In this document: positions 44,655-59,372 of the stretch, one piece after another
Numbering within the stretch: the stretch's first letter is position 1
How the letters are laid out: the number at the start of each line of letters is the position of its first letter
From: Cyanophora paradoxa CCMP329
Taxonomy: Eukaryota > Plantae > Glaucophyta
Direction: 5' to 3'
DNA: 64,000 bases
Assembly: GCA_004431415.1 (NCBI GenBank)
Contig: QPMI01000601.1
Coordinates: 248,001-312,000 of the forward strand
Position numbers and translations under genes: made by a program
The notes under the pieces: generated by a model
Databases searched by the model: none
Told to the model about the DNA's origin: nothing
What the model saw: the letters and a program-made list of their open reading frames with translations, nothing else

Positions 44655-47600
44655 ATGGCCGGCGAACTTCGCTTCGTCGAACTGAGGAAGCCGGCGGACG
44701 CCCCGGCGGTGCGCGGGCCCCTCGCTGGGCCTTGCTGGCGCGTATTTACCACGCTGAGAGACTCGTGCAGGGATCCGTGGCGCTTTGGCTAGGCGCCGAT
44801 GCTAGCTCGGCCGACGCTGTGATTGGCGTCGGCCGTGTGAGCCGCAACGACATTGAGGCCCCGTCGCTCGGCCGGATGATTCGCCTTGAGTTGTTCGGAA
44901 ATTCACATCCCGACGGGACGCGCCGGCGGCCGCCGAGCCTCCCGTCGGTGGAGCAGGTCCGTCCGCGCCATGGCCGCGCCTCCGCGATGACGCGCGGGGC
45001 TCACGGGCGCGCGTTCGTCCAGGTCTTCAAAGAGAGCGCGGGGGAGTCCCGCGGGCCCGTGGTCGACGTGCTCTCCGACGAGGTGATGCTCGGGACGCGG
45101 CCCAGCGGCGGACCGGCGGCGGCCACCAACGAGCTCCTCCGCCAGCTCAACGTGCGCGCGCCGCCCGCCGCGCGCATCTCTCTATGCGCGCCGACGACGC
45201 CTCCCGCGCCAGGACGCGCTCTCGAGGCACGAGGTCCGCATCCAGGCGCTCCGGACGGGCCGCAGCGTGACCGTCTCCAGCGGTGCGCTCCCTCATTCAG
45301 TGCCGCCGCGGCATTCTCCCGAACCGTCCTCGCAGGCTCCCACGGGGCGCGGCCGGCGGATCAGCGCGTCCCGACGCCCGAGCTGTGCGCCCCGCGGCGA
45401 CTCCGGCTGGGGCGCGGCGAGCGCTGACGCGGGGCCGGCAGGCCGGTGCCGATCCGGGAGGACTCGGAGGAGGGCGTGCCGCAGCTGGAGTCGGCCTCGA
45501 GCCCCGAGGTGTGCCCCACGGAGAACGAGAGCGACGGGTGCGCGCCCCGCCCCGCGCCGCCCCCCGCGCCCCGCGCCGATGGCCCGGCCGCGCGCAGGGC
45601 GACGAGGCCGGAGCCGGCGCCCCCCACGCCGAGGCTGCCGCGGTGCGCTGGGTGGGGCGCGCCGCGCGCCGCCGTGCGGGGCCGAGCGGGGCCGGGGCGG
45701 GGCGCAGCGGGCGGTGGGCGAGGCGCTGCTCTCCAAGTCGGCGCAGGCGAAGATGATGGCCCGCCGCGTCGCCGGCCTCCCCGCCGCCGACCTCCTCCTC
45801 TTCCCGGTACCCCGCCCGCCCCCTCCCCCGCGCTTTCGCCGCCAACGCCGAGCGGGCCGGCAGGCGGTGCGGGAGGCGTCGCGGGCGGCGGACGCGGCGC
45901 AGCTTCGTTCGCTGCTCGAGGCGCACGTCGCAGCGGGCGGACGACTCGTCGCGACCGTGCGGCACCCCCAATGCCCGCGCGCCGCGCGGGGCGCCGACGC
46001 GCGGGCCGCAGTTGGCGACCGCCGCCTCGTCGGAGCCGCTGTTCCGCGTGCCGCCGGCCGCAGAGGCGCCCAGGCGGGGCCGCGGCCGCCCCCGCAAGAC
46101 CCGGGGCCGGACGGGTCGGCCTCGCCCCCAAGGCCGAGGAGCGCGCCCCGGAGCCGGCGCCGCCCGCCAAGCGCCGCGGGCGGCCCCGAAGGACGGGCGG
46201 GGCGGGGCGGCGCGCCGCCCGCCCCTGCCCCGACCTCGCCCGGGCCTCGGCCCCGCACTCCCCGAGCCCGAGCCCGAGTCCGACACCTCCCCGCCCCGCG
46301 GCCGGGCCGGGCCGTGGCCGGAGCCGCTCCCCGGGCGATCCCCAACGCGGGCATCCCGGGGCGGGGAGGCCGGGGCGGCCGGGCCGGGGCCGGGCCGGGG
46401 CCGGGGCCGGGGCGGGGCGGGGTCGGGGGCGGCGGAGGATGGGCGGCGTCGGGGGCGGAGGAGCGGCGGGGCAAGCGGGCGCGGCGGGCGCGGGCGGAGT
46501 CGGGGTCGGGGTCGGAGGGGGAGGCGGGGCGGGGGCCGCTGGACCCGCCGGGGTCGCCCCCGCTGGAGAGCACGTGGGAGGACGACCCGGCCGGCATCGA
46601 GGACGTCGTCCGCCGCATCCCCGTCGGTGGGCCCGCCCCGCCCTGCAGCCCCGGCGCCCCGGCGCCCCCGCCCTCTCCTCCTCCCCGGCCCTGACGGGCC
46701 GCGCGCAGCGCAAGTGAACAAGATCCTGGAGCGGGCGGCGATCATGAAGTGCTCCCTCGAGAAGCTATACCGCCACCTCAAGAACGCCCGCGGCGCCGAG
46801 TCGGTCCGCCCGCGCCGCCCCCGGCGCCCCCGCTCCTCCTCCTCTGCCCCGCGCCGCCCGACGCGCGCCGGGCCGCCCGAGCAGCAGGAGCTGCTGCGCT
46901 TCGAGGGCCGCGAGCTCACCGAGGCGCGCCCCGCCCGCGCGCGGGAGGCCCCGCCCCGGCCCCGCCCCTTCCTGACGGGCTCGCAGCGGGAGTTCTTCGC
47001 GATCCGCGGGCGCTACGAGGTGGAGGCCGTCGTCGACTTCGACGCCACCACCGTGCGCGCCCCGCCCCCGCCCTCGGCAGAGTCCTCTTGAGGGCAGAGG
47101 CGAGGCTGACGCGGAGCTCTCTTCTTCTTCCCGCGAAGGGCCTCTACCTGGTCAAGTGGGCGGGGTACCCCGACTCGGACAACACGTGGGAGCCGGTGAA
47201 GAACCTCCGCGACTGCTGGCACTTCGTCGAGCGCTTCGCGGTACCCCTCGAGACTCCCCGCCTCGCCCTTGCCTCCCCCGCTGAGCCCCGGCGGCAGCAA
47301 GCGACCGGGAAGGCGGTGGGGCCCCGGCCGCGGCCCAGCTCGGCCCCGCGGATGAGCGCGGTGCGCCCGTTCCCGCCCCCGTGTCGCCCTCGCTCGCGGC
47401 TGGGCGCTCAGCGGCGCGGCAGAAGGCGAAGGCGATGGCGGAGGGGGCGGCGGCGGGCGGGGCGGCGGCCCCGCGGCCGCGGCGGCCGCGGCGGGCCAGC
47501 AGCCCTCGCCCCGCCGCGGGGGCGCGCCAAGGTGGTGGGCCCCGCCCCCGCCCCCGCCCCGCGCCCGCGCCCGCCCCGCTCGCGCCCGCCCTCCCGCCCT

Positions 47601-47998: not shown

Positions 47999-48232
47999 TC
48001 ATGAGCGCGCGGGATCCGGAGCCCCGGCGCCCGCCCCCGCGCTCGCTCGACGCCCCCGCGCTTCTGTATCTGTGCTCAATTTCGACTACTTAGCTCACAA
48101 ACTGTACACGAGTTTACAGGGCGAAGCTATCTAGCTACAGTACACGATTTTACAGTACAGGGGGTGCTAATTTACCGTACAGGGGGTGGCCGGCTGACGC
48201 CGGCGCCGGGCCCGGCCCCGCGGGTCGGGGGG

Positions 48233-50711
48233 CTACTCGGTCTCCTTGAAGAGCTCGCGGCCGATGAGCATGCGCCGGATCTCGCTCGTCCCCGCGCCTG
48301 CCCGATCGCGATCAGCTAGCAGAGACTCGGGCAAGCGGGCCGGGAACGGCACCGATCTCGTAGAGCTTGGCGTCGCGCAGGAGGCGGCCCGTCGGGTACT
48401 CGTTGATGTACCCGTTGCCCCCTGCCCCGCCCCCCGTCAGCTCGGGGGGCGCGGGGCCGGGCTGGGGCGGGCGGCGTCAGCTCGCCGAGGCACTGGATGG
48501 CCTGCAGCGCCACCTGCGTGCCGTTCTCCGCGGAGAGCAGGATGGCCGCCGCGCAGTCCTAAGGGGGTACGCGTTAGTCGGGGGCCGAGGGATGGGTGCC
48601 GGTGGGTGGGCGGGGGGTACCTTGCGGTCGATGCGCCCCTCGTCGCAAGCGCGCGCGACGGCGTACACGAACGCCCGCGTCGACTGCGGCGAAAGCTTGG
48701 GGATTGGGGGAGGATGGGGGCGAGGGGGGGTAGGGGGCGGGGGGACCTGGAGCGTGACGTACATGTCGGCGAGCTTGCCCTGCATCAGCTGCGCCCGCGC
48801 CCAGCGTCGAAAACAAGCGGCCGGGGCCCCGAAGCGGGCGTGCCTGGAAGGTGCCGATGGGCTGGCCGAACTGGCGGCGCTCGTGCACGTACGGGAGCAC
48901 GGCGTCCATCGCCGCCTGCATCAGCCTGCGCCGCTCGACGCGCTCAGGCGAGGACGACGGGGGAAGGGAAGGGGCAGCGGGGCGCGCCCGAGGGGCCCGG
49001 CGGCGAGGACGGCGCGCTCGACGTCGAGGCCGGACATGAGCACGCGCGCCCCGCCGTCCAACTCCCCCAGCACGTTCTCCCCTGCCAGAGGGCGAGGCTC
49101 GGCCCAGGCCGCGGCAGGGCGGGGGCCGCGGGGCGGGGCGGGCGCACGGGGGACCTCGCAGTCCTCGAAGACGAGCTCGCAGGTGTTGGAGCCCCGCATG
49201 CCGAGCTTGTCCAGCTTCTGCGCCGTGCTGAAGCCCCGCATCCCCTGCCCCAGGCGGCGGTGAGGAGCAGAGGGGAGGGCGGAGAGGCGAGGGGGGCGCG
49301 ACCTTCTCGACGAGGAAGGCGGTGATGCCCTTCGCGCCGCGCTCCGGCGCCGTCTTCGCGTACACCACCAGCACGTCCGCTGCCCCGAAAGGTTGGGGGG
49401 ACGGGGGGGGGGCGAAGAGAGGGGTAGGGGAGGGGTAAGGGAGGGGTAGGCACCATCGGGCCCGTTCGTGATCCACTGCGGGAGAGGAGCGTGGCGCCGA
49501 TCAAATCGCGATCGGTTTTGAGATGGGAAAAGGGGAATGGAGAGGGGACGGACCATCTTGGAGCCGTTCAGAACGAAGGAGTCGCCCCTGCTCGGAAGGG
49601 CGTGGTGTGAGGCTCGGAGGAGCGGGGCGGGGCCGGGGGAGGGGGCGGGCCTGGGGCGGGCGGTGGTGGCCATGGCGACGACGTCGGACCCCGCGCCGGG
49701 CTCGCTCATCGCCAGCGCCCCCACCCGCTCCCCGCTCACCAGCCCCGGCAGGTACCTGCGCCCCGCGCGTAACGGGGGGGCACGTGCGTCGCTGCGGGCG
49801 CGCACCGCCGCTTCTGGTCCTCGTTGCCGTTCCGGACGATCTGGTTCACGCAGAGATTCGAGTGCGCCCCTGCGGGGCGTCGGCACGGCAGAAAGCTGGG
49901 CCGTGGGGCGGGCCCGGGGGGGTACCGTAGGAGAGGCCGACGGAGCCGGACGCGCGTGAGATCTCCTCCAGGGCCACGCTGCCCGCCCGCCCGGCCCCGG
50001 CCTCAGCCCAGCGCCCGGGCCGCATCGGACGCGCATCGGACGCGCGGCGGGCACCAGTGCTCGAGGTAGCCCATGCCGAGCCCTCCGAACGAGGCTGCCG
50101 CAGGACGCGCGCGGGCGGCGTGAGCGGAGCGCTATCGCGGAGCGCGCGACGGCGGAGCGGCGCGAGGGGCGCGCACGCGGCGCCGTGATGCCGAGGACGC
50201 CGAGGTTGCCGAGCTCCCGCCACAGGTGCTGCGCAGCGCCGCGGCGCGGCGCGGCCCCTTCAGACTCGCGGAGCTCGAGGGCATGGCTCGTTGGGGACTC
50301 GTACGCCGGGGAACTCGTTCTTGCGATCGATCTCGGCCGCCAGAGGTGCGATCCGCTCTGCCGCGAACTTGCTCACTGTTCGAACGATTGGCACACGGTG
50401 AGCCAGCTGCAGCGATATCGATATCGATGAGCGCTAGCTTGGAGCGGAAAGGGCGCACCGGTCTCGCGGAGCTCGAGCTGATTTTCGGTAAGCCCGCCGA
50501 CGCTGCCGGGATAACCCGCGCCGTGCGCGTCAGCGGAGGGCAGCTGCAGCTGCATGCATATGCGCAGGCCTAGGGGCGCGCGCGCTGCTGCGGCTGGCGA
50601 CAGCACCCACCTGTCCTTAACGGACCTCGCGTGGAAGAGTCGACGCAGACCGTACGACCGCCGCATTAGCGGCGCGCACCGGCCGAGGGCGCCTATAGCG
50701 AGCTGCAGCAT
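48233..50711 (-). CDS. IVD: Isovaleryl-CoA dehydrogenase, mitochondrial, multi-exon
   Basis: [138 protein letters not shown]. Confidence 0.96.
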
Positions 50712-51054
50712 GTCTCCGCCGGTCAGAGAACCAGATCGGCCTGGCGCTGCGCTGTCGGAGAATACCGCTTGTGGACCGCTTGAATAGCTCGGCGCGCTCC
50801 GCGTATGCTTCGCGCGCCGGCGCGACAGCGGGCTGCTCTATCTGGCTTTGCCGGCGAAGCTCGGCGGGCGGTGCGGCAGTGAGCAGATCGTCGCAAAATG
50901 GCGGCCCGCGCGTCGCTCGAGCGTCGGAAGACTGGATCCGGAGACGACGAACCGCTTATAAGGTCAATATTTTTGGGGTACGGGAGTGGGCCGGTGAAAC
51001 GCGTCTACCCCCAGAACGCGAGGCGAACGTGGGGTGAGTGCGCGGGCTTCGAGG

Positions 51055-53361
51055 ATGTCGGACCGAAAGCGAAGATCTTCAGAAAGCGAACTACGAGACG
51101 ATTCGGAGCTCGCGGAGGACCACAGCGGCAGCGCGATGCACAGCCTCCCAGATGTAGTCCTCTCGCGCGTCTTCTTCTTGCACGCGACGACGCTCGACGC
51201 GCAACGCGGTGATCCAGCGTATCTGTCGAACCCAGCGCCGCCGTTCTGCTGCGGGGAGCTTGAGGCGGACCTGTGCCCGGAGCTGGCGCTCGAACCGGAC
51301 GTGATGCCGGAGCGGCTTGCTCCGCTTCGGGCCGTGTGCCGCAGATTCAGGCGGCTGGTGCGATCATCTCGTCGTGCAGATCTGCTTGCTTCTCGCTCAT
51401 CCCGCGCCCGCCACAGATCGATGCGGACCCGTACTTGCGCGAGCGTGTGCTGTTGAACTGCGTCCCGGACAGCAAAGAACTCGAAGGCAAACCTCTCGTA
51501 TGCCGCGATGACTTCCGCAGCGATGAAGACCTAGGCGAAGCGCGGTGGCATGAACCGGGCGCGGGCGTCTCGTGGCTCCTGCAGCGGCCGGAGAGCTTCA
51601 AGCGCGGCGTGCGGCGGCTGCGGGTGGTGCTGGACCGCTTCCCGGCGCTGTGCGCGGCGCAGCTGCGGGCGCTCGGCAGCGACGCGGTGCTGGCGGAGAG
51701 CGTCGAGGAGCTCGACCTGCTCTTCCTGCGCCTGGAGGCCCAGCACCACCGCATGTGCTGTGCGTCCCTCGTCCCCCGCTTCCCGAACCTCCGCGTCCTC
51801 CGCATCGCGTCCCACGTGCACGCGGTCGAGGGCATGGTGGAGCCGCTGCGCCTGCGCGGCGGGGCGCGTGCGAAGCAGACCGCCCGTAAGAGCACCGGCG
51901 GGAAGGCGCCGCGGAGACCACTTTGGAACGACGAGGTGACGGAGCCGGCGGCGTGGGCGATCGCTTCGCTCGGCCGGCTGGAGGTGCTCGACATACCGGG
52001 CCTGCCCATGGCCGTCGGCGGCATCCGGGCGATGGGGGCGCTGCCCCTCCGCGCCCTCCATCTCAGTTCCTTCCCTCCGTGGGCTAGCGACAGGAGCGAG
52101 CGTCTCGTGGAAGCCGCGGCGCGGGCCTTCCCCAAGCTGCAGCGCCTCCGCTACCACGGGTCCAGCCGGGGCGGACCCGCGCGTTGCATTGCGGACGACG
52201 AGGATGGCGCTGACTACCTCGCGCTCGACGAGGCCCTCGCCCGCCTTGCCGACCTCCGCTGTGCGTCGTCCGCCCCCGCCTCTCTGCCTTGCAGCCCCGC
52301 CCCGCCCGACTGGCTGACGGGCTCGCGGGCCGTCGCGGCGCCGCAGCGCTCGGCATGAAGTTGTGCCTCCACTCCCTCAAGTTCCTGCGGCACCTCCCCA
52401 GGCTCGAGCACTTCTCCGCGGTCCTCGACGCGCGGGCCGACCTGGCGCCCCTTGCCAAGCTCGGCCCCCGCCTCCGCACCCTCGGCGCCCTCCGCTCCGA
52501 GGCGGAGCTCCTCGTACGGGGACTCGTTCGGGGCTCCAATGACGATTCGGACGGGAGCGAGTCGGACAGCTCCGCGGCCGAGGCCGAGCGAGAGGCGCGG
52601 GCGCGCCTCCGCGCGGCGGCCTCGCGCGCCGCCCTCGTCTCTACCCTGGAGGGCATGCACGCTCTCGAGGTGCTCGCCACCCCTCGCCCTCGTTCTCCGG
52701 CTCTCACCCCGGCCCCTGCCCCTCAGGGCCTGCACCTGTGGGCGACTGAGGGGACGCTGCTCGCCCTCGCCGAGGGACCCTTCTCGAGCCTGCCCCGCCT
52801 CCGCCTCCTCTCTCTCTTCTGCGCCAACGGCCCCACCGTGCCTCTTCCCCTCATCACGGCGCGCCCCGCGCCGCGTCGCCCCGCTCGCCCCTCCCTCCGT
52901 GTCCGGCTGACCGTGCTGGGGCGCAGCGCACGGCGGCGGGCATGGCTGCCCTGCAAGACCTCCGCGTCGACGCGCTGCTCCTTCCGCTCCCCGAGGAGGC
53001 GGCGGCGGCGCTCGCCGGCCGCCGCCTGCGCCGCCTGCGCGCCACGCTCTTCCCCTCTCTGGAGCTTCTCGACGAGGACGAAGGTGGGGATGGTCCGGAG
53101 CCGCCGGAGGGGGCGCGGCGGCGCCTGCGGGCGACTCTCCTCCCCTCCCTGGAGCTTCTCGACGAGGACGGAGGCGGGGATGGCCCCCCGGCGCGGCGGT
53201 GCCGGGAGGAGCGGGGGCGCCTGGAGGCCCGCCTGGGCGTGCGCGTCTCGCCGCACCCCGCCTGCAAGCGGGGCGCCGACGTGGGCAGCCGCTGGATGTA
53301 TCTCCCGCGGGCGCCATCGAGGTCCGACGAGAAGCTGACCCGATTCTTGGATGCGATGTAG
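51055..53361 (+). CDS. F-box-like / leucine-rich-repeat protein with an internal LRLRGG-histone H3 tail motif
   Basis: F-box-like SLPDVVLSRVF...LRAVCRRFRRL. LRR-like FPNLRVLRI, LGRLEVLDI, FPKLQRL, LPRLEHF, LPRLRLLSL. Few introns. Confidence 0.8.
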
Positions 53362-53531
53362 GCAGGCCGCGCCCGTTGGCGTCTACATTCTAGATGAGTA
53401 ATTCCTTTCCATTTTGCAGATATCGATAAATTTATATATTTGTTTGCCTAATGCATGTGTGCGTCGACGCCATGCAACTTGGGGCCACCGCTCGCTACGG
53501 CTAGAGCTGCGGAGCGCGCCCAGCGAGGCGG

Positions 53532-56500
53532 CTACCAGAGGCCGGAGCGGGCCCGGCGGGCGGGGGCGAGGCGGACGGACTCGATGGCGTCGAGCTCGGC
53601 GCCGGGGCCGGGGCCGGGGCCGCCGGCGGAGGCGACCGTCGCGAGGGCGCGCCGCAGCTCCTCCACGCCCACCTCCTGTCCCTCCCGGGTGAGCCAGGCC
53701 AAGCCCGCCGCGGGGCACTCTCTGCGCTCTTGCTTCGGGGCGCACCGGGGGCGGCCAGCGGGAGGCGAGGGGCCGGATGGTGACGGGGGCGGGGTCGAGG
53801 GCGTCGTAGTAGCGGTAGACGGCGCGCAGCCAGGCCGCCAGCACGGGGGGCGCCCGCAGCCCGAAGACCTGCGCGAGCCACCGTCGGGGGAGGCGGGGCA
53901 GCGAGCGGGGCGGGGCCGGGGGGACGGGACCTGGGGGGCGCGTTGGGCGACCTCGGGGTCGGGGCTCTCGCGCTCCCGCGCGAAGCGTCGGCAGAGCTGG
54001 CGGCAGACGCCCTCCACCCGCCCCGGCGCCAGCGCCCCGTCGCACGCGTACTTCCTGCGCCCCGGGCCCCCGCCCCGCTCGAGAAAGGCGGGCGGGGGCT
54101 CGCTAAGCTCGCTCCGGGCGGGCGCACCGGAGCTTGCAGAGGGTGGCGCGGGGCACGGGCCCGTAGCTGGCGTCGAGGAAGGAGCCGAGGAGGCCGAGGA
54201 GGGTCGGCTTGCCCAGCAGGCGCCGCACGGGCAAGCCGACCCTCCTCGACCCTCCTCGGAGGGTCGGCTCCGCCAGCCGCCCCGCCACCTCCTCCGGCGT
54301 GGGCGCCGCTTTGGCCGGCACCGCCTCATACTCCTTCTGCGCGGGCGTGAGGCGCCGCGGGGCGAGGGGGCGTGCGGGCGAGGCGGCGCACGGTGAAGGC
54401 TTCCCGCCGCGGCTGCGCGCTCGGGCGGGGCTCGCCGCCAGCCGCGGATCGCGAGGGCGGCGGAGCGCTGGCGGCGGCAGCGACGTCGCCCCGGGCGGGT
54501 GCCGGTGTGCTGGCCGCGGCGCCGGCGTGTACAGCTGGCGTCGCAGTCCCTGCAGCTGCGAAGCCGCCGCGCCGCTGCTTCGTCTCGACGATCTCGCGCA
54601 CCGCCGACTGCACGTCCCCGAAGACCCGCACCCCGTGCCGCTGCGCCACGTCTGCGCCCGCCCCGCCCGCATCGAATCCAGATTCGATCCGGCGGGGGCG
54701 GGGGCGGGGGCGGACCGCGGAGGTACTCGCGGGCGCGGTTGAGGTCCTTCAGCTCGCCCGCCTGCACCGCCTCGCCCCCGATCGCCGCCCCCGCCGGCAC
54801 CGGCAGCACCCTGCCCGCCCCCGCCCTCAGCCGTGCTTCGGGTCCGGGCGGCCGGCGCGGGGCTGCGGGGCGGCGGGGCGGGGCGGACGCGAGGACGACG
54901 GGGCGGGCGGCGGCGATGTACTCGGCGGCCTCGACCATCGAGGCGAGCCCGCGCGTCTGCGCGTCGATGACGAAGAGCAGCACGCCCGCCGCCCGCTTCG
55001 CCTCCGCCTCCACCGCCACCAGCTCCGGCCGCCACTCCTCCACCTGCGCCCCGCCCCGCGTCGGCCCGCGCCCCCGCAGCCGCGCCGGACCCGGGGCCGG
55101 GGCCGGGGCGGGGCTCGCCTGCGGGTTGAAGAAGCTGACGCCGGCGCGCGTGAGCTCCGGTATGGCCAGCTCCCGCCGCCACGTCGTCGGGTTGCACGCC
55201 CCGCCCAGGAAGACCTCGCAGCCGCCGGCCCCGGAGGCGGCCGGGGCGGCGTGCGGGCCGTGGCCGTGGCCGGGGCCGCCGCGGAGCGTCTCGAAGCCGC
55301 CGAGCCGCTGCTTCGTTTCGACGATCTCGCGCACCGCCGACTGCACGTCCCCGAAGACCCGCACCCCGTGTCGCTGCGCCACGTCTGCGCCCGCCCCGCG
55401 CGCATCGGATCCAGATCCGATCCGGCGGGGGCGGGGGCGGGGGCGGGGGCGGACCGCGGAGGTACTCGCGGGCGCGGTTGAGGTCCTTCAGCTCGCCCGC
55501 CTGCACCACCTCGCCCCCGATCGCCGCCCCCGCCGGCACCGGCAGCACCCTGCCCGCCCCCGCGCTCAGCTCCCGCCGGGGCGGCCGGCGCGGGGGCTGC
55601 GGGCGGCGGGGCGGGGCGGACGCGAGGAGGACGGGGCGGGCGGCGGCGATGTACTCGGCGGCCTCGACCATCGAGGCGAGCCCGCGCGTCTGCGCGTCGA
55701 TGACGAAGAGCAGCACGCCCGCCGCCCGCTTCGCCTCCGCCTCCACCGCCACCAGCTCCGGCCGCCACTCCTCCACCTGCGCCCCCGCCCCGCCTCGGCC
55801 CGCGCCCCCGCAGCCGCGCCGGGGCCGGGGCCGGGGGCGGGGCTCGCCTGCGGGTTGAAGAAGCTGACGCCGGCGCGCGTGAGCTCCGGTATGGCCAGCT
55901 CCCGCCGCCACGTCGTCGGGTTGCACGCTCCGCCCAGGAAGACCTCGCAGCCGCCGGCCCCGGAGGCGGCCGGGGCGGCGTGCGGGCCGTGGCCGTGGCC
56001 GGGGCCGCCGCGGAGCGTCTCGAAGCCGCCGAGCCGCTGCTTCGTTTCGACGATCTCGCGCACCGCCGACTGCACGTCCCCGAAGACCCGCACCCCGTGC
56101 CGCTCCGCCACGTCTGCGCCCGCCCCGCCCGCATCGAATCCAGATTCGATCCGGCGCCGGGCGGGGCAGGGGCGGGGGCGGACCGCGGAGGTACTCGCGG
56201 GCGCGGTTGAGGTCCTTCAGCTCGCCCGCCTGCACCGCCTCGCCCCCGATCGCCGCCCCCGCCGGCACCGGCAGCACCCTGCCCGCCCCCGCCCTCAGCT
56301 CGAGCTGTGCCCGGGGCGGCCGGCGCGGGGCCGCCCGGGGCGGCGGGGCGGGGCGGACGCGAGGACGACGGGGCGGGCGGCGGCGATGTACTCGGCGGCC
56401 TCGACCATCGAGGCGAGCCCGCGCGTCTGCGCGTCGATGACGAAGAGCAGCACGCCCGCCGCCCGCTTCGCCTCCGCCTCCACCGCCACCAGCTCCGGCC

Positions 56501-56698
56501 GCCACTCCTCCACCTGCGCCCCCGCCCCGCGTCGGCCCGCGCCCCCGCAGCCGCGCCGGACCCGGGGCCGGGGCCGGGGGCGGGGCTCGCCTGCGGGTTG
56601 AAGAAGCTGACGCCGGCTCGCGTGAGCTCCGGTATGGCCAGCTCCCGCCGCCACGTCGTCGGGTTGCACGCCCCGCCCAGGAAGACTTCGCACGCCAT
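53532..56698 (-). CDS. Raw/OLRN-1-like protein with three tandem nucleoside 2-deoxyribosyltransferase-like domains and a C-terminal helical, possibly EF-hand-like region
   Basis: Three copies of EVFLGGACNPTTWRRELAIP..FFNPQVEEW..LLFVIDAQTRGLASMVEAAEYI..LKDLNRAREYL. The 3' end is approximate. Confidence 0.85.
54560..56695. repeat. Tandem triplication of a ~730-745 bp unit, including introns
   Basis: Near-identical exons and introns, with unit anchors at ~55207, ~55936 and ~56679. Confidence 0.95.
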
Positions 56699-57058
56699 GC
56701 CGAAAGCTTGATCGGGAGCTCGAGCTGAAACCTCGAGGCTTCCGGCAAGGCTGGACCGCGGGGCCCGCTAGCTAAGGCTCATTTCTACTTAGCTAGTACC
56801 AGAAATCCCTCGAAAAAGAACAGGAGGCGAGAGAACGCGCGGGGCTGCCGGACCTATGTATGCAATCGAGGCTCGGCCTCCGGAACGTGAGAGGGAGTCT
56901 TCTGAATGTAACGACTGCGTTCACAGCGTCCAGCTGGGCCGACGAGGCTGGGCAGCAGCAGCTCCACCAGCCGGAATTTCGCGTACCCACCTACGACCCG
57001 TCTGGCCGCCGATCGGGCTGTCGACGGCCATCATCGCGCGTTAAAGCTCACCTACGAG

Positions 57059-59140
57059 ATGCAGCCGCAGCCTCCATCGCGCCTGAAGAGGCTCGTCGCG
57101 CGGCTTTTGCCGCTCGCAGTCGTCGGCGGCGTCGCTTACTGCCTGGCACCGTCGAAGCCGCCCGAGTGGCCACCGAAGGCCGCCGCGGAGGCCCCGCCTG
57201 CGCGATCCGTCTACAGCTGGGGCCTCAACCACGCGGGCCAGCTGGGCGTCGGGACCGTGAAAGCTGCCCCGCTGCCGACGCGCCTCGAGGTGTGCGGCCG
57301 CGGAGCGCCGAAGCGCCGCGCGCCCCGTTCCGCCGTGCCTCACGCTTCCGCGGGCGCTCGCAGACGCTCGACAGCAGCCGGTTCGACATCGTGCGCGTCT
57401 GCGCCTCTGGGCTCTCCAGCGCTGCGCTGGACAGCCGGGGGCAGCTCTACACGTGGGGCTGCGGAGGCAACGGGAGGCTGGTGCGCACGCGCGCGAGCGC
57501 CGCCGCGCGCCGAGCGCCGCGCGCGCTGACCGCCGCTGAAGGGTCACGCGGACGAGAGCGACCGGCTGATCCCGCAGCGCGTCGAGACGCCGCTGCCGCT
57601 CCGCGTGCGCCGCTCCACCCTCGCCCGGGACGCCTCGGCGCCTCAGCGGGGCGGGCGGGGCAGGACGTGGCGCTGGGGGAGTATCACCTGGCGGCGGTGG
57701 ACGTGGAGGGCGGGCTCTGGACGGTGGGGCGCGGGCGGGGCGGCCAGCTCGGGCACGGGGAGGCGCGGGACGCCCTCGCCCTGCGCAAGGTCGCCGGCCT
57801 CGAGGGCAAGCGCGCCGTCCAGATCGCCGCCGGCGAGGCCCACACCGCCGTCCTCACCGGCCCGCCCCCGCCCCGCCCCGCCCCGCCCCGCCCCGCCCCG
57901 CGCCGCTCACGGGCGCCCGCAGAGGACGGGGAGGTGTACACGTTCGGCAGCGGCTTCGGCGGTGCGCCCGCGTACCCCCGCACGCTCCGGCCGGCCTGAT
58001 CGGGTACCCCCCGGCGGAAGGCGGGCTGGGGCACGGGGAGCGGAAGGACGCGACGGCGCCGCGGCGGGTGGAGGCGCTCGCGGGGAAGCGCGTCCGCTCC
58101 GTCGCCTGCGGCCGTGACGTCTCCTTCTTCGTCACCGGTAGCCCCTCCCCTCCCCCTTTCTCTCCCCCGCGCCGCCGGTACTGGTTGCTCAAGCGGACGC
58201 AGACGACGGCATCTACGCGTGCGGCAGCGACGACTTCGGTGAGCTGCGTACCCCCCTTCGGGGTTTTCCGGACCCGCCCCCCGACGCCGGCGGCAGGGCA
58301 GCTGGGCCTGGGGAAGCACGAGCGGACCGTGCGGGTCCCGCTGCCCATCCGCAACCTCGGCGACCTTGCCGTCGCCCAGGCCCGCCCCTTCTCGTTCCGC
58401 GGGGTACGGCGAGTTCCGATCCTCCCCGGGGTACGCAGGTGGCGGCGGGGGACTTCCACGCGGCCGCCGTCACGCGTGACGGGGCCCTGTACACCTGGTG
58501 CGGCGGATACGGGGGCGGGCGCCCGGGGCCGGGCCGAGCGCCGCGCGCAGGGGCTGGAACAAGGAGGGGAACCTCGGGCAGGGGGACACGGCCGACCAGT
58601 CCCTCCCCCGCCGCCTCGAGGGCCTACCCCGCATCGCCAAGGTCCCCGTACCCCCCTCGCTTCTTCCCCCCGCACCCTCCTCTCACGTACCCCCCGCAGG
58701 TCGCGTGCGGCGGGGGCCACACGGCGGCCCTCTCGGAGGCCGGCGAGCTCTTCGTCTTCGGCCGCGGGCGAGACGGGCAGGCGCGCGTACCCCCGAAGGA
58801 AATCGAACCCCTCGAATTTAACCACGTACCCCGCAGCTGGGCCGCGGGGACCTCCTGGAGTCGATCGCCGCGTACCGCACGACCCCCGTGCGCCCCCTGC
58901 GCCCGGACCGGCCTGTACCCCCCGCGCCGCCCCCTGAGACCGGTACCCCCGGCCAGGTGCGGGTGGAGGCGCTGAAGGGGAAGGCGGTTGTGGACGTGGC
59001 GTGCGGGCGCGACCACACGGTGCGCGTTGGTTGCAGCGGGGCGGGGCGGGGGCGCCCCCTGATTAAAAGCCTCGCCCTTCGAATTCGGCTCACGTGCGGA
59101 ATCGCGCGAGCAGCTGGCTCTGGCCGCCGAGAGGAGATGA
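57059..59140 (+). CDS. RCC1-repeat beta-propeller protein with N-terminal hydrophobic segment, multi-exon
   Basis: Repeated VYSWGLNHAGQLG, LYTWGCGGNGRLGH, VALGEYH, IAAGEAHT, VAAGDFH, VACGGGHT and VACGRDHT. Confidence 0.92.
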
Positions 59141-59372
59141 CCCCCAGCCAGGCCTCGGGCGTTACGCCGCCTCCCTTGGCGTCCCGGATTCGATCCCAGG
59201 CCCAGCTAGCGCGCGCGCACACACACAGGCTTCCGAGTTCAGAAATCTGCTCACTGCTCAATTCAGAGAATCGCTCGCGAAGATGAAAAGGCGTCTACAC
59301 AGGCGAGAGCTAGCCGCGCAAAAGAGAACTAAATCTAGGGGGAGAACATTTACAGGCGTGCTATGTACAGTT

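What the first reader, a model, noticed from the sequence alone, without database searches (positions are those of the whole stretch)
51846..51923. Ubiquitin C-terminus fused to a histone H3 tail mimic inside an F-box/LRR protein: a candidate protease-activated histone decoy
Seen: inside one long exon, between two LRRs, the frame reads [32 protein letters not shown] is exactly the last six residues of ubiquitin. The next 20 residues match histone H3 1-20 ([20 protein letters not shown]) at 17/20, keeping R2, K4, K9, S10 and K14, and H3 Ala1 begins exactly at the scissile position. Established: deubiquitinases cut after LRGG, and many H3K4 readers such as PHD fingers need a free Ala1 amino group. 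Inference: cleavage would unmask a true H3-like N-terminus on the C-terminal LRR fragment. That could make a switchable decoy or bait for chromatin readers and writers, possibly delivering them to an SCF ligase through the F-box-like part. No ubiquitin fold or histone fold flanks the motif.
Basis: partly seen in the sequence, partly recalled or inferred. Interest (0 to 1): 0.93.

Follow-up and report, generated by a model that had tools for sequence, protein, structure and literature searches.

The report
Cleavage-gated histone H3 tail decoy
An algal ubiquitin-ligase adaptor hides a copy of the histone H3 tail right behind a ubiquitin-type cutting site; the same small cassette is conserved in an unrelated enzyme family of other protists, which suggests an undescribed way to switch on a histone decoy by protease cleavage.

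Summary
Confirmed. LRLRGG directly followed by an H3 1-20 look-alike (17/20) lies in frame in spliced exon 2 of an expressed F-box/LRR gene of Cyanophora paradoxa (g20181), in a disordered loop of the LRR solenoid, with no ubiquitin or histone fold nearby. It is under selection: a 55%-identical paralog keeps 18/19 residues while other loops are 22% identical; a third paralog lacks it. The scan noted such a cassette before on another piece of this genome (s1-525000, probably that paralog). New here: LRGG|ART-x-QTARK is also conserved, with heavy synonymous change, inside giant ankyrin-WGR-PARPs of other protists (44-74% identical to each other), and the whole cassette sits in different loops in two clades. 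No paper describing it was found. Best reading (0.6): a Gly-Gly protease nicks the loop and unmasks a free H3 N-terminus, which the F-box protein shows as bait for H3-tail readers or writers. Cleavage, the protease and the targets are inferred, not shown; bare LRGG peptides are poor substrates of ordinary deubiquitinases. New variant of histone mimicry; interest 0.8.

The parts
51846..51863 (+). LRLRGG, identical to ubiquitin residues 71-76; predicted Gly-Gly cleavage site (cut after 51863)
   Evidence: identical in paralog P0002; LRGG invariant in ankyrin-PARPs
51864..51923 (+). Histone H3 1-20 mimic (17/20; T3A, K18R, Q19P); Ala1 at P1'
   Evidence: residues 1-13 conserved 12/13 in P0002
51021..51357 (+). 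Exon 1 (transcript contigs start 51021; first in-frame ATG 51055, database model starts at 51136); carries the F-box
51145..51357 (+). F-box-like motif split by a conserved Cys-containing insert (first half 51145-51177, second half 51316-51357)
   Evidence: Pfam F-box E 0.0035, below cut-off; paralog P0002 F-box-like E 0.0041 and ESM Atlas F-box clusters 0.92-0.93; coordinates
51417..52260 (+). Exon 2 (844 bp): LRR solenoid with the cassette in a disordered loop
   Evidence: VIA-align Z 10.4-10.8 to FBXL2, COI1, FBXL17, TIR1
51780..51815 (+). LRR beta-strand just before the cassette loop
51942..51971 (+). LRR helix just after the cassette loop
52347..52669 (+). Exon 3 (LRRs)
52727..52858 (+). 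Exon 4 (LRR); following intron is best read GC..AG
52927..53466 (+). Exon 5, stop TAG 53359-53361, 3' UTR to at least 53466

Best explanation
A portable, cleavage-gated histone-tail mimic. The F-box/LRR protein (an SCF substrate adaptor) carries LRLRGG|H3-tail in a floppy loop. A Gly-Gly-specific protease (an atypical deubiquitinase or a clan-CE/Ulp-like enzyme) cuts after GG and leaves H3 Ala1 with a free amino group, as Met removal does on real H3. Because the cut is between the strand and helix of one repeat, the two halves probably stay folded together, so the SCF adaptor now displays a native-like H3 N-terminus and can capture or titrate proteins that read or write the free H3 tip (A1-R2 ... 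R8-K9) and bring them to the ligase. Shown: expression, exonic position, F-box/LRR fold, loop position, selection on linker and tail as one unit, recurrence in ankyrin-PARPs. Inferred: cleavage, the protease, the halves staying together, the binding partners, SCF activity.
For: Spliced transcript in two studies. Cassette in a loop with pLDDT <50 of an LRR solenoid like FBXL2/COI1/TIR1. 18/19 identity to paralog P0002, tied for the best 19-residue window in a 55%-identical pair, against 15/67 in other loops (Fisher p 1e-8) and 2/9 on each flank. In ankyrin-WGR-PARPs of 44-74% identity, positions -4 to +8 are invariant except K4; Leu at -4 was not in the search pattern yet is in all 6 loci; pairs differ at 3-11 of 13 codons synonymously and 0-1 non-synonymously. 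The cassette is in loop A in one clade and loop B in the other (100/100 support), and the empty loop keeps only H3-like remnants without LRGG: linker and Ala1 travel together. Among the retrieved proteins an intact AR[TA]xQTAR follows Met 289 times, LRGG 4 times, anything else 5 times; in viral contigs always Met, 35/35. PHD readers need the free N-terminal amine (PMC8166343). Precedent for DUB cleavage after GG releasing an active C-terminal part: SDE2 (PMC13572447).
Against: No direct evidence of cleavage; a cyanelle N-terminome had no such peptide (uninformative for a nuclear/cytosolic protein). Bare LRGG peptides are very poorly hydrolysed by DUBs without the ubiquitin surface. Many fungal proteins keep long internal H3 tails without LRGG or Ala1, so internal mimics can be selected uncut. 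The metagenome pattern demanded RGG before the tail, so the PARP set is partly ascertained. The F-box scores are below Pfam cut-off. No ortholog outside C. paradoxa was found.
Confidence: 0.6

Rival explanations
1. Uncut internal mimic. The segment works intact: the tail is an internal K9/S10 site (for chromodomains, K9 methyltransferases, or serine ADP-ribosylation in the PARPs), and LRLRGG is a binding motif, for example a pseudo-substrate that sits in a deubiquitinase active site and looks like a ubiquitylated H3 tail.
For: Bare LRGG is a poor DUB substrate; internal H3 tails without a free Ala1 are common in fungal proteins; K4 is not invariant in the PARP copies while R8-K9 is; internal mimics such as G9a ARKT and PRMT6 ARTK are known.
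Against: It does not explain why Ala1 sits exactly at P1' in every LRGG copy in two unrelated families, nor why tail remnants lose Ala1-Arg2 when they lose LRGG.
Confidence: 0.2
2. Protease tripwire. The cutter is foreign: a viral, virophage/Polinton or retroelement GG|X protease or OTU deubiquitinase. Infection or element activity nicks the loop and switches on the H3 bait as a defence (or, for element-borne copies, a counter-silencing) signal.
For: Clan-CE proteases cut short linear motifs, adenoviral (M/I/L/N/Q)XGG|X and virophage GG|X (PMC6048507), which LRGG|A fits without any ubiquitin fold. Unchecked scan notes report LRLRGG sites in retroelement polyproteins, an OTU-like protease and Ulp1 genes in this genome.
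Against: Very tight conservation across divergent protists suits a host enzyme better than an arms race; the cassette was not found in viral contigs; the notes were not checked here.
Confidence: 0.12
3. Cleavage serves turnover or localisation, not decoy function: the cut exposes a C-terminal diglycine degron on the F-box half, and the basic tail is a nuclear import signal.
For: The matching loop of the cassette-free paralog P0003 is also basic. Diglycine C-degrons are known from memory (not checked here).
Against: An import signal needs no exact H3 sequence with Ala1, Gln5, Thr6, Ala7, Ser10-Thr-Gly-Gly conserved.
Confidence: 0.04
4. A passenger: a fragment of a ubiquitin-H3 fusion or H3 gene inserted into a tolerant loop, kept alike in two paralogs by recent insertion or gene conversion.
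For: Absent from paralog P0003; the genome holds many H3-tail copies by unchecked notes; DNA of P0002 could not be fetched to count synonymous changes.
Against: Flanks diverge right up to the cassette (2/9 each side), which conversion would not give; no natural ubiquitin-H3 fusion was seen in 298 retrieved tails; PARP copies show strong purifying selection.
Confidence: 0.04

Closest known systems
H3 N-terminal mimicry proteins (H3TMs; Chen et al. 2021, PMC8166343)
   Same: Non-histone protein offering Ala1-Arg2-X-Lys4 with a free amino group to PHD-type readers.
   Different: H3TMs start with the motif and are unmasked by co-translational Met removal; here the tail is 250 residues inside and can only be unmasked by an internal cut. 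The mimic is also far longer (13-30 residues).
Internal histone mimics (G9a ARKT, PRMT6 ARTK, influenza NS1 tail; as listed in PMC8166343)
   Same: Histone-like sequence inside a non-histone protein.
   Different: They are 4-residue motifs with no upstream cleavage site and no free Ala1.
SDE2/Sde2 ubiquitin-like processing (USP5; Ubp5/Ubp15; PMC13572447) and algal ubiquitin fusions such as ubiquitin-NiSOD (PMC6332867)
   Same: Cut after a ubiquitin-type Gly-Gly releases a new N-terminus on the downstream part.
   Different: These keep a whole ubiquitin fold for protease recognition; here only 4-6 residues are present, and what is released is a histone tail.
F-box/LRR SCF adaptors (FBXL2, FBXL17, Skp2, TIR1, COI1)
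   Same: N-terminal F-box-like motif and LRR solenoid (Z about 10-11).
   Different: F-box split by a Cys-containing insert; a loop carries a linear bait motif instead of the LRR surface alone binding the substrate.
Clade-1 ankyrin PARPs (Tetrahymena PARP6, Dictyostelium ADPRT3, C. elegans PME-5; PMC6502085, PMC4245714)
   Same: The other carriers of the cassette have this ankyrin-WGR-PARP layout.
   Different: The passages read in those papers mention no LRGG|H3-tail; whether the named proteins carry it could not be checked.

Membership tests
Histone mimic (non-histone protein with histone-like motif) | Histone tail sequence in a protein without a histone fold | tested here: met
   17/20 to H3, no histone Pfam, LRR fold
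Histone mimic (non-histone protein with histone-like motif) | Is bound or modified by histone readers or writers | not testable with these tools
   needs pull-down or modification data
H3TM (H3 N-terminal mimicry protein) | Motif iM-Z-R-X-K at the protein's N-terminus | tested here: not met
   tail starts at residue 251 of 678, inside exon 2, after Gly not Met
Ubiquitin / ubiquitin-like fusion precursor (SDE2, ubiquitin-NiSOD type) | Ubiquitin fold upstream of the Gly-Gly | tested here: not met
   upstream is an LRR strand and a short loop; acidic linker in the PARPs
Ubiquitin / ubiquitin-like fusion precursor (SDE2, ubiquitin-NiSOD type) | LxGG motif at the junction, conserved | tested here: met
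Ubiquitin / ubiquitin-like fusion precursor (SDE2, ubiquitin-NiSOD type) | Cleavage after Gly-Gly in cells | not testable with these tools
   only a cyanelle N-terminome could be searched; blank
F-box/LRR protein (FBXL type) | N-terminal F-box | tested here: inconclusive
   Pfam E 0.0035-0.004, under the cut-off, motif split by an insert; ESM Atlas nearest clusters of the paralog are F-box proteins at 0.92-0.93
F-box/LRR protein (FBXL type) | LRR solenoid | tested here: met
   AlphaFold model pTM 0.66; VIA-align Z 10.4-11.5 to LRR proteins incl. FBXL2, COI1, FBXL17, TIR1
F-box/LRR protein (FBXL type) | Binds Skp1 and forms an SCF ligase | not testable with these tools
   needs co-purification
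Clan-CE protease substrate (adenain/virophage MVP type) | (M/I/L/N/Q)XGG|X motif in an exposed segment | tested here: met
   LRGG|A in a disordered loop; motif match only

The most novel reading that the evidence does not exclude
LRGG|H3-tail is a portable switch, reused by unrelated eukaryotic proteins (an SCF adaptor in a glaucophyte, ankyrin-PARPs in other protists), in which a ubiquitin-pathway protease cuts a bare linear site and creates a native-like histone H3 N-terminus on a non-histone enzyme; in Cyanophora this makes a protease-armed bait that feeds chromatin readers or writers to a ubiquitin ligase.
Probability: 0.4. Interest if true: 0.92.

Novelty: new variant of a known kind. Interest (0 to 1): 0.8.

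Why it matters
Known histone mimics are either internal (and cannot satisfy readers that need the free H3 tip) or N-terminal and always on. A conserved cleavage-gated mimic would be a third, regulated class, and would couple deubiquitinase-type proteolysis directly to chromatin signalling. It also implies a protease that cuts a bare LRGG, against the usual need for the ubiquitin fold. The claim is sharply testable (one GG-to-AA change, one neo-N-terminal peptide), possibly in a tractable ciliate if its ankyrin-PARP carries the cassette. It also warns that H3-tail peptides and antibody signals in these protists can come from non-histone proteins.

Tried and rejected
Searches of this gene were run exon by exon, by reference; a search with the joined spliced model was left out. 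The exons were joined only inside a script to check the frame. The database's own model P0001 came back as a hit and was used for an exact look-up and an alignment, not as a search query. Dead ends: short-region protein search from the window ORF gave nothing (too short to score); the third search was swamped by mis-joined tandem H3 models; DNA for paralog P0002 was not on record, so no dN/dS for the Cyanophora pair; 2024 runs X12/X13 did not cover the motif, so no second strain; cassette absent from viral contigs and prokaryote genomes; single-sequence fold of P0002 failed (pLDDT 39) and was not used; Foldseek gave only weak LRR rows; Tetrahymena PARP6 sequence could not be fetched (too long for the length window; no supplement). 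Literature searches for the motif found nothing. Rejected: assembly or intron artefact; chance; LRLRGG as an ordinary LRR strand (it models as loop, and recurs in non-LRR proteins); an internal Met start giving a normal H3-like N-terminus (Gly precedes Ala1).

Full report
Observation. window:51846-51923 (+) reads LRLRGG then [20 protein letters not shown], 17/20 identical to histone H3 1-20. The H3-coding pattern never occurs in 100 shuffles. LRLRGG by itself is common enough in this 70% GC DNA (2 found, 0.49 expected); what is beyond chance is that it ends exactly at H3 Ala1 in frame (about 1e-6).

The gene. Contigs from two studies cover 51021 to about 53450 without a mismatch and skip four introns (51358-51416, 52261-52346, 52670-52726, 52859-52926), so they are spliced transcripts and the motif is inside the 844-bp exon 2. 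The frame is open over all five exons: 678 aa from ATG 51055, motif at 245-270, 428 aa from Ala1 to the end. The exon-2 search against 1.84 billion representatives returned the protein itself and two paralogs, all Cyanophora paradoxa: g20181 (this gene), g22375 (P0002, 55%) and g11559 (P0003, 44%). Exon 1 has a weak F-box match split by an insert; the paralog's nearest ESM Atlas clusters are F-box proteins. The AlphaFold model of exon 2 is a strand-helix solenoid that matches FBXL2, COI1, FBXL17 and TIR1 at Z 10.4-10.8. The cassette lies in the low-confidence loop 134-170, after a strand and before the helix of the same repeat. There is no ubiquitin or histone fold.

Selection in Cyanophora. 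P0002 has [19 protein letters not shown] at the same place: 18/19 identical, tied for the best window of the whole pair, while the nine residues on each side match 2/9 and the other disordered loops 15/67 (Fisher p 1e-8; binomial p 2e-4 against overall identity). P0003 has an unrelated basic loop. An earlier scan note describes the same cassette in an F-box/LRR gene on another piece (s1-525000), most likely g22375; I could not match it by coordinates.

The cassette elsewhere. A DNA pattern for RGG-AR[TA]KQTARK found six metagenome loci. All have Leu before RGG although Leu was not in the pattern. All are giant ankyrin-repeat proteins, and those that run to the end have WGR, PARP-regulatory and PARP catalytic domains: the clade-1 ankyrin PARP layout (PMC4245714, PMC6502085). 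The hosts are AT-rich protists; a neighbouring gene of L004 is closest to alveolate CDPKs, so ciliates are likely (inference). Two more members came from a protein search (P0008, P0009) and keep LRGG|ART-x-QTARKS with K4F and K4R. The proteins are 44-74% identical to each other, position -5 and beyond vary, positions -4 to +8 are invariant except K4, and cassette pairs differ at 3-11 of 13 codons silently and 0-1 by amino acid. In one clade the cassette is in the loop before a conserved helix, in the other clade in the loop after it (100/100 support); the unused loop keeps only scraps such as GKAPRK, without LRGG or Ala1. So linker and tail start behave as one unit, in a family unrelated to F-box proteins and in another lineage. 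Caveats: the pattern required RGG, and the PARP copies share ancestry, so this is two independent families, not eight. Among all retrieved proteins an intact tail start follows Met 289 times, LRGG 4 times and other residues 5 times; in viral contigs it always follows Met. Fungal proteins often have internal tails without LRGG, nearly all lacking Ala1.

Mechanism. PHD-type readers bind the free amino group of Ala1 (PMC8166343). The simplest reason for keeping a ubiquitin C-terminus exactly in front of Ala1 is that a cut there makes that amino group, as for SDE2, which USP5 cuts after Gly-Gly to release the active part (PMC13572447). Since the cut is inside one repeat, the nicked solenoid should hold together (inference), so the F-box half would still carry the tail and could bring tail-binding proteins to an SCF ligase. 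The conserved set A1, R2, Q5-K9 with variable T3, K4 and K14 points to readers of the free tip and of K9 rather than K4me3 readers (inference). The weak point is the protease: bare LRGG peptides are very poorly hydrolysed by DUBs, which need an exosite on the ubiquitin surface (bioRxiv 10.1101/2020.01.30.926881). Clan-CE proteases do cut short (M/I/L/N/Q)XGG|X motifs (PMC6048507), and unchecked notes report bare LRLRGG sites in retroelement polyproteins of this genome, so enzymes able to use such linkers are plausible but not shown. I give cleavage-gated bait 0.6, uncut mimic or pseudo-substrate 0.2, foreign-protease tripwire 0.12, degron/import signal 0.04, passenger 0.04.

Comparison with what is known. 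It is a histone mimic by sequence, but not an H3TM (tail not at the N-terminus) and not a ubiquitin-like fusion (no fold); it works like a hybrid of the two. Full-text searches found no paper with the motif or the idea; the library lacks most subscription papers, so this is not proof of novelty.

Verdict. Real, expressed, selected, and recurring in an unrelated family; mechanism specific and testable but unproven. New variant of a known kind; interest 0.8.

Noticed in passing
L001:2434-2472, L002:6753-6791, L004:6833-6871, L005:4794-4832, L006:1250-1288, L044:3572-3610, L046; P0008, P0009: Giant ankyrin-WGR-PARPs of AT-rich protists (probably ciliates) carry LRGG|H3-tail internally; the cassette sits in different loops in two clades. 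The tail includes the K9-S10 site, a known serine ADP-ribosylation site on real H3 (from memory), so it may be a built-in PARP substrate. Worth its own study.
   Followed up: yes
window 51178-51315 (+): The F-box is split by a ~46-residue insert whose core (NPAPP-x-CCG-x-LEA-xx-CPELA) is nearly invariant in all three paralogs; three conserved cysteines, possibly metal-binding.
   Followed up: no
window 50975 / 51021: The F-box gene is head to head with an acyl-CoA dehydrogenase gene (isovaleryl-CoA type by reading; about 48000-50975, minus strand); transcript contigs end only about 45 bp apart.
   Followed up: partly
window ~53020-53190 (+): Exon 5 has a recent internal duplication of about 30 codons (RRLRATL-PSLELLDED-GGDGP twice), absent from paralog P0002.
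   Followed up: no
window 52859-52926: Intron 4 has a GC donor (GC..AG).
   Followed up: partly
window ~47140-47240 (+): A chromodomain gene (Pfam Chromo E 2e-10) lies 4.6 kb upstream of the H3 mimic; probably coincidence.
   Followed up: partly
window 53535-56750 (-): Gene with about three near-identical tandem units containing a nucleoside 2-deoxyribosyltransferase-like domain (PF15891), tail to tail with the F-box gene.
   Followed up: partly
window 56860-59290 (+): RCC1-repeat gene.
   Followed up: partly
L022:4528, L035:778, L041:6203: Giant-virus contigs with ORFs that start [11 protein letters not shown] but show no histone core in the same frame: candidate viral N-terminal H3 mimics (L041 may be an intron-split H3).
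   Followed up: no
P0025, P0027, P0030, P0031, P0035, P0036, P0040, P0053, P0055, P0058, P0059: Large, mostly fungal proteins (two with VIT/VWA domains) with a long internal H3 tail copy that lacks Ala1, often after Gly-Gly or Arg-Gly.
   Followed up: no
P0010: 739-aa metagenome protein with three H3 tails, two without a core, one after GGGG.
   Followed up: no
P0050: 1483-aa protein with SET, FHA and 2OG-oxygenase Pfam hits and an internal H3 tail: a writer with its own tail copy.
   Followed up: no
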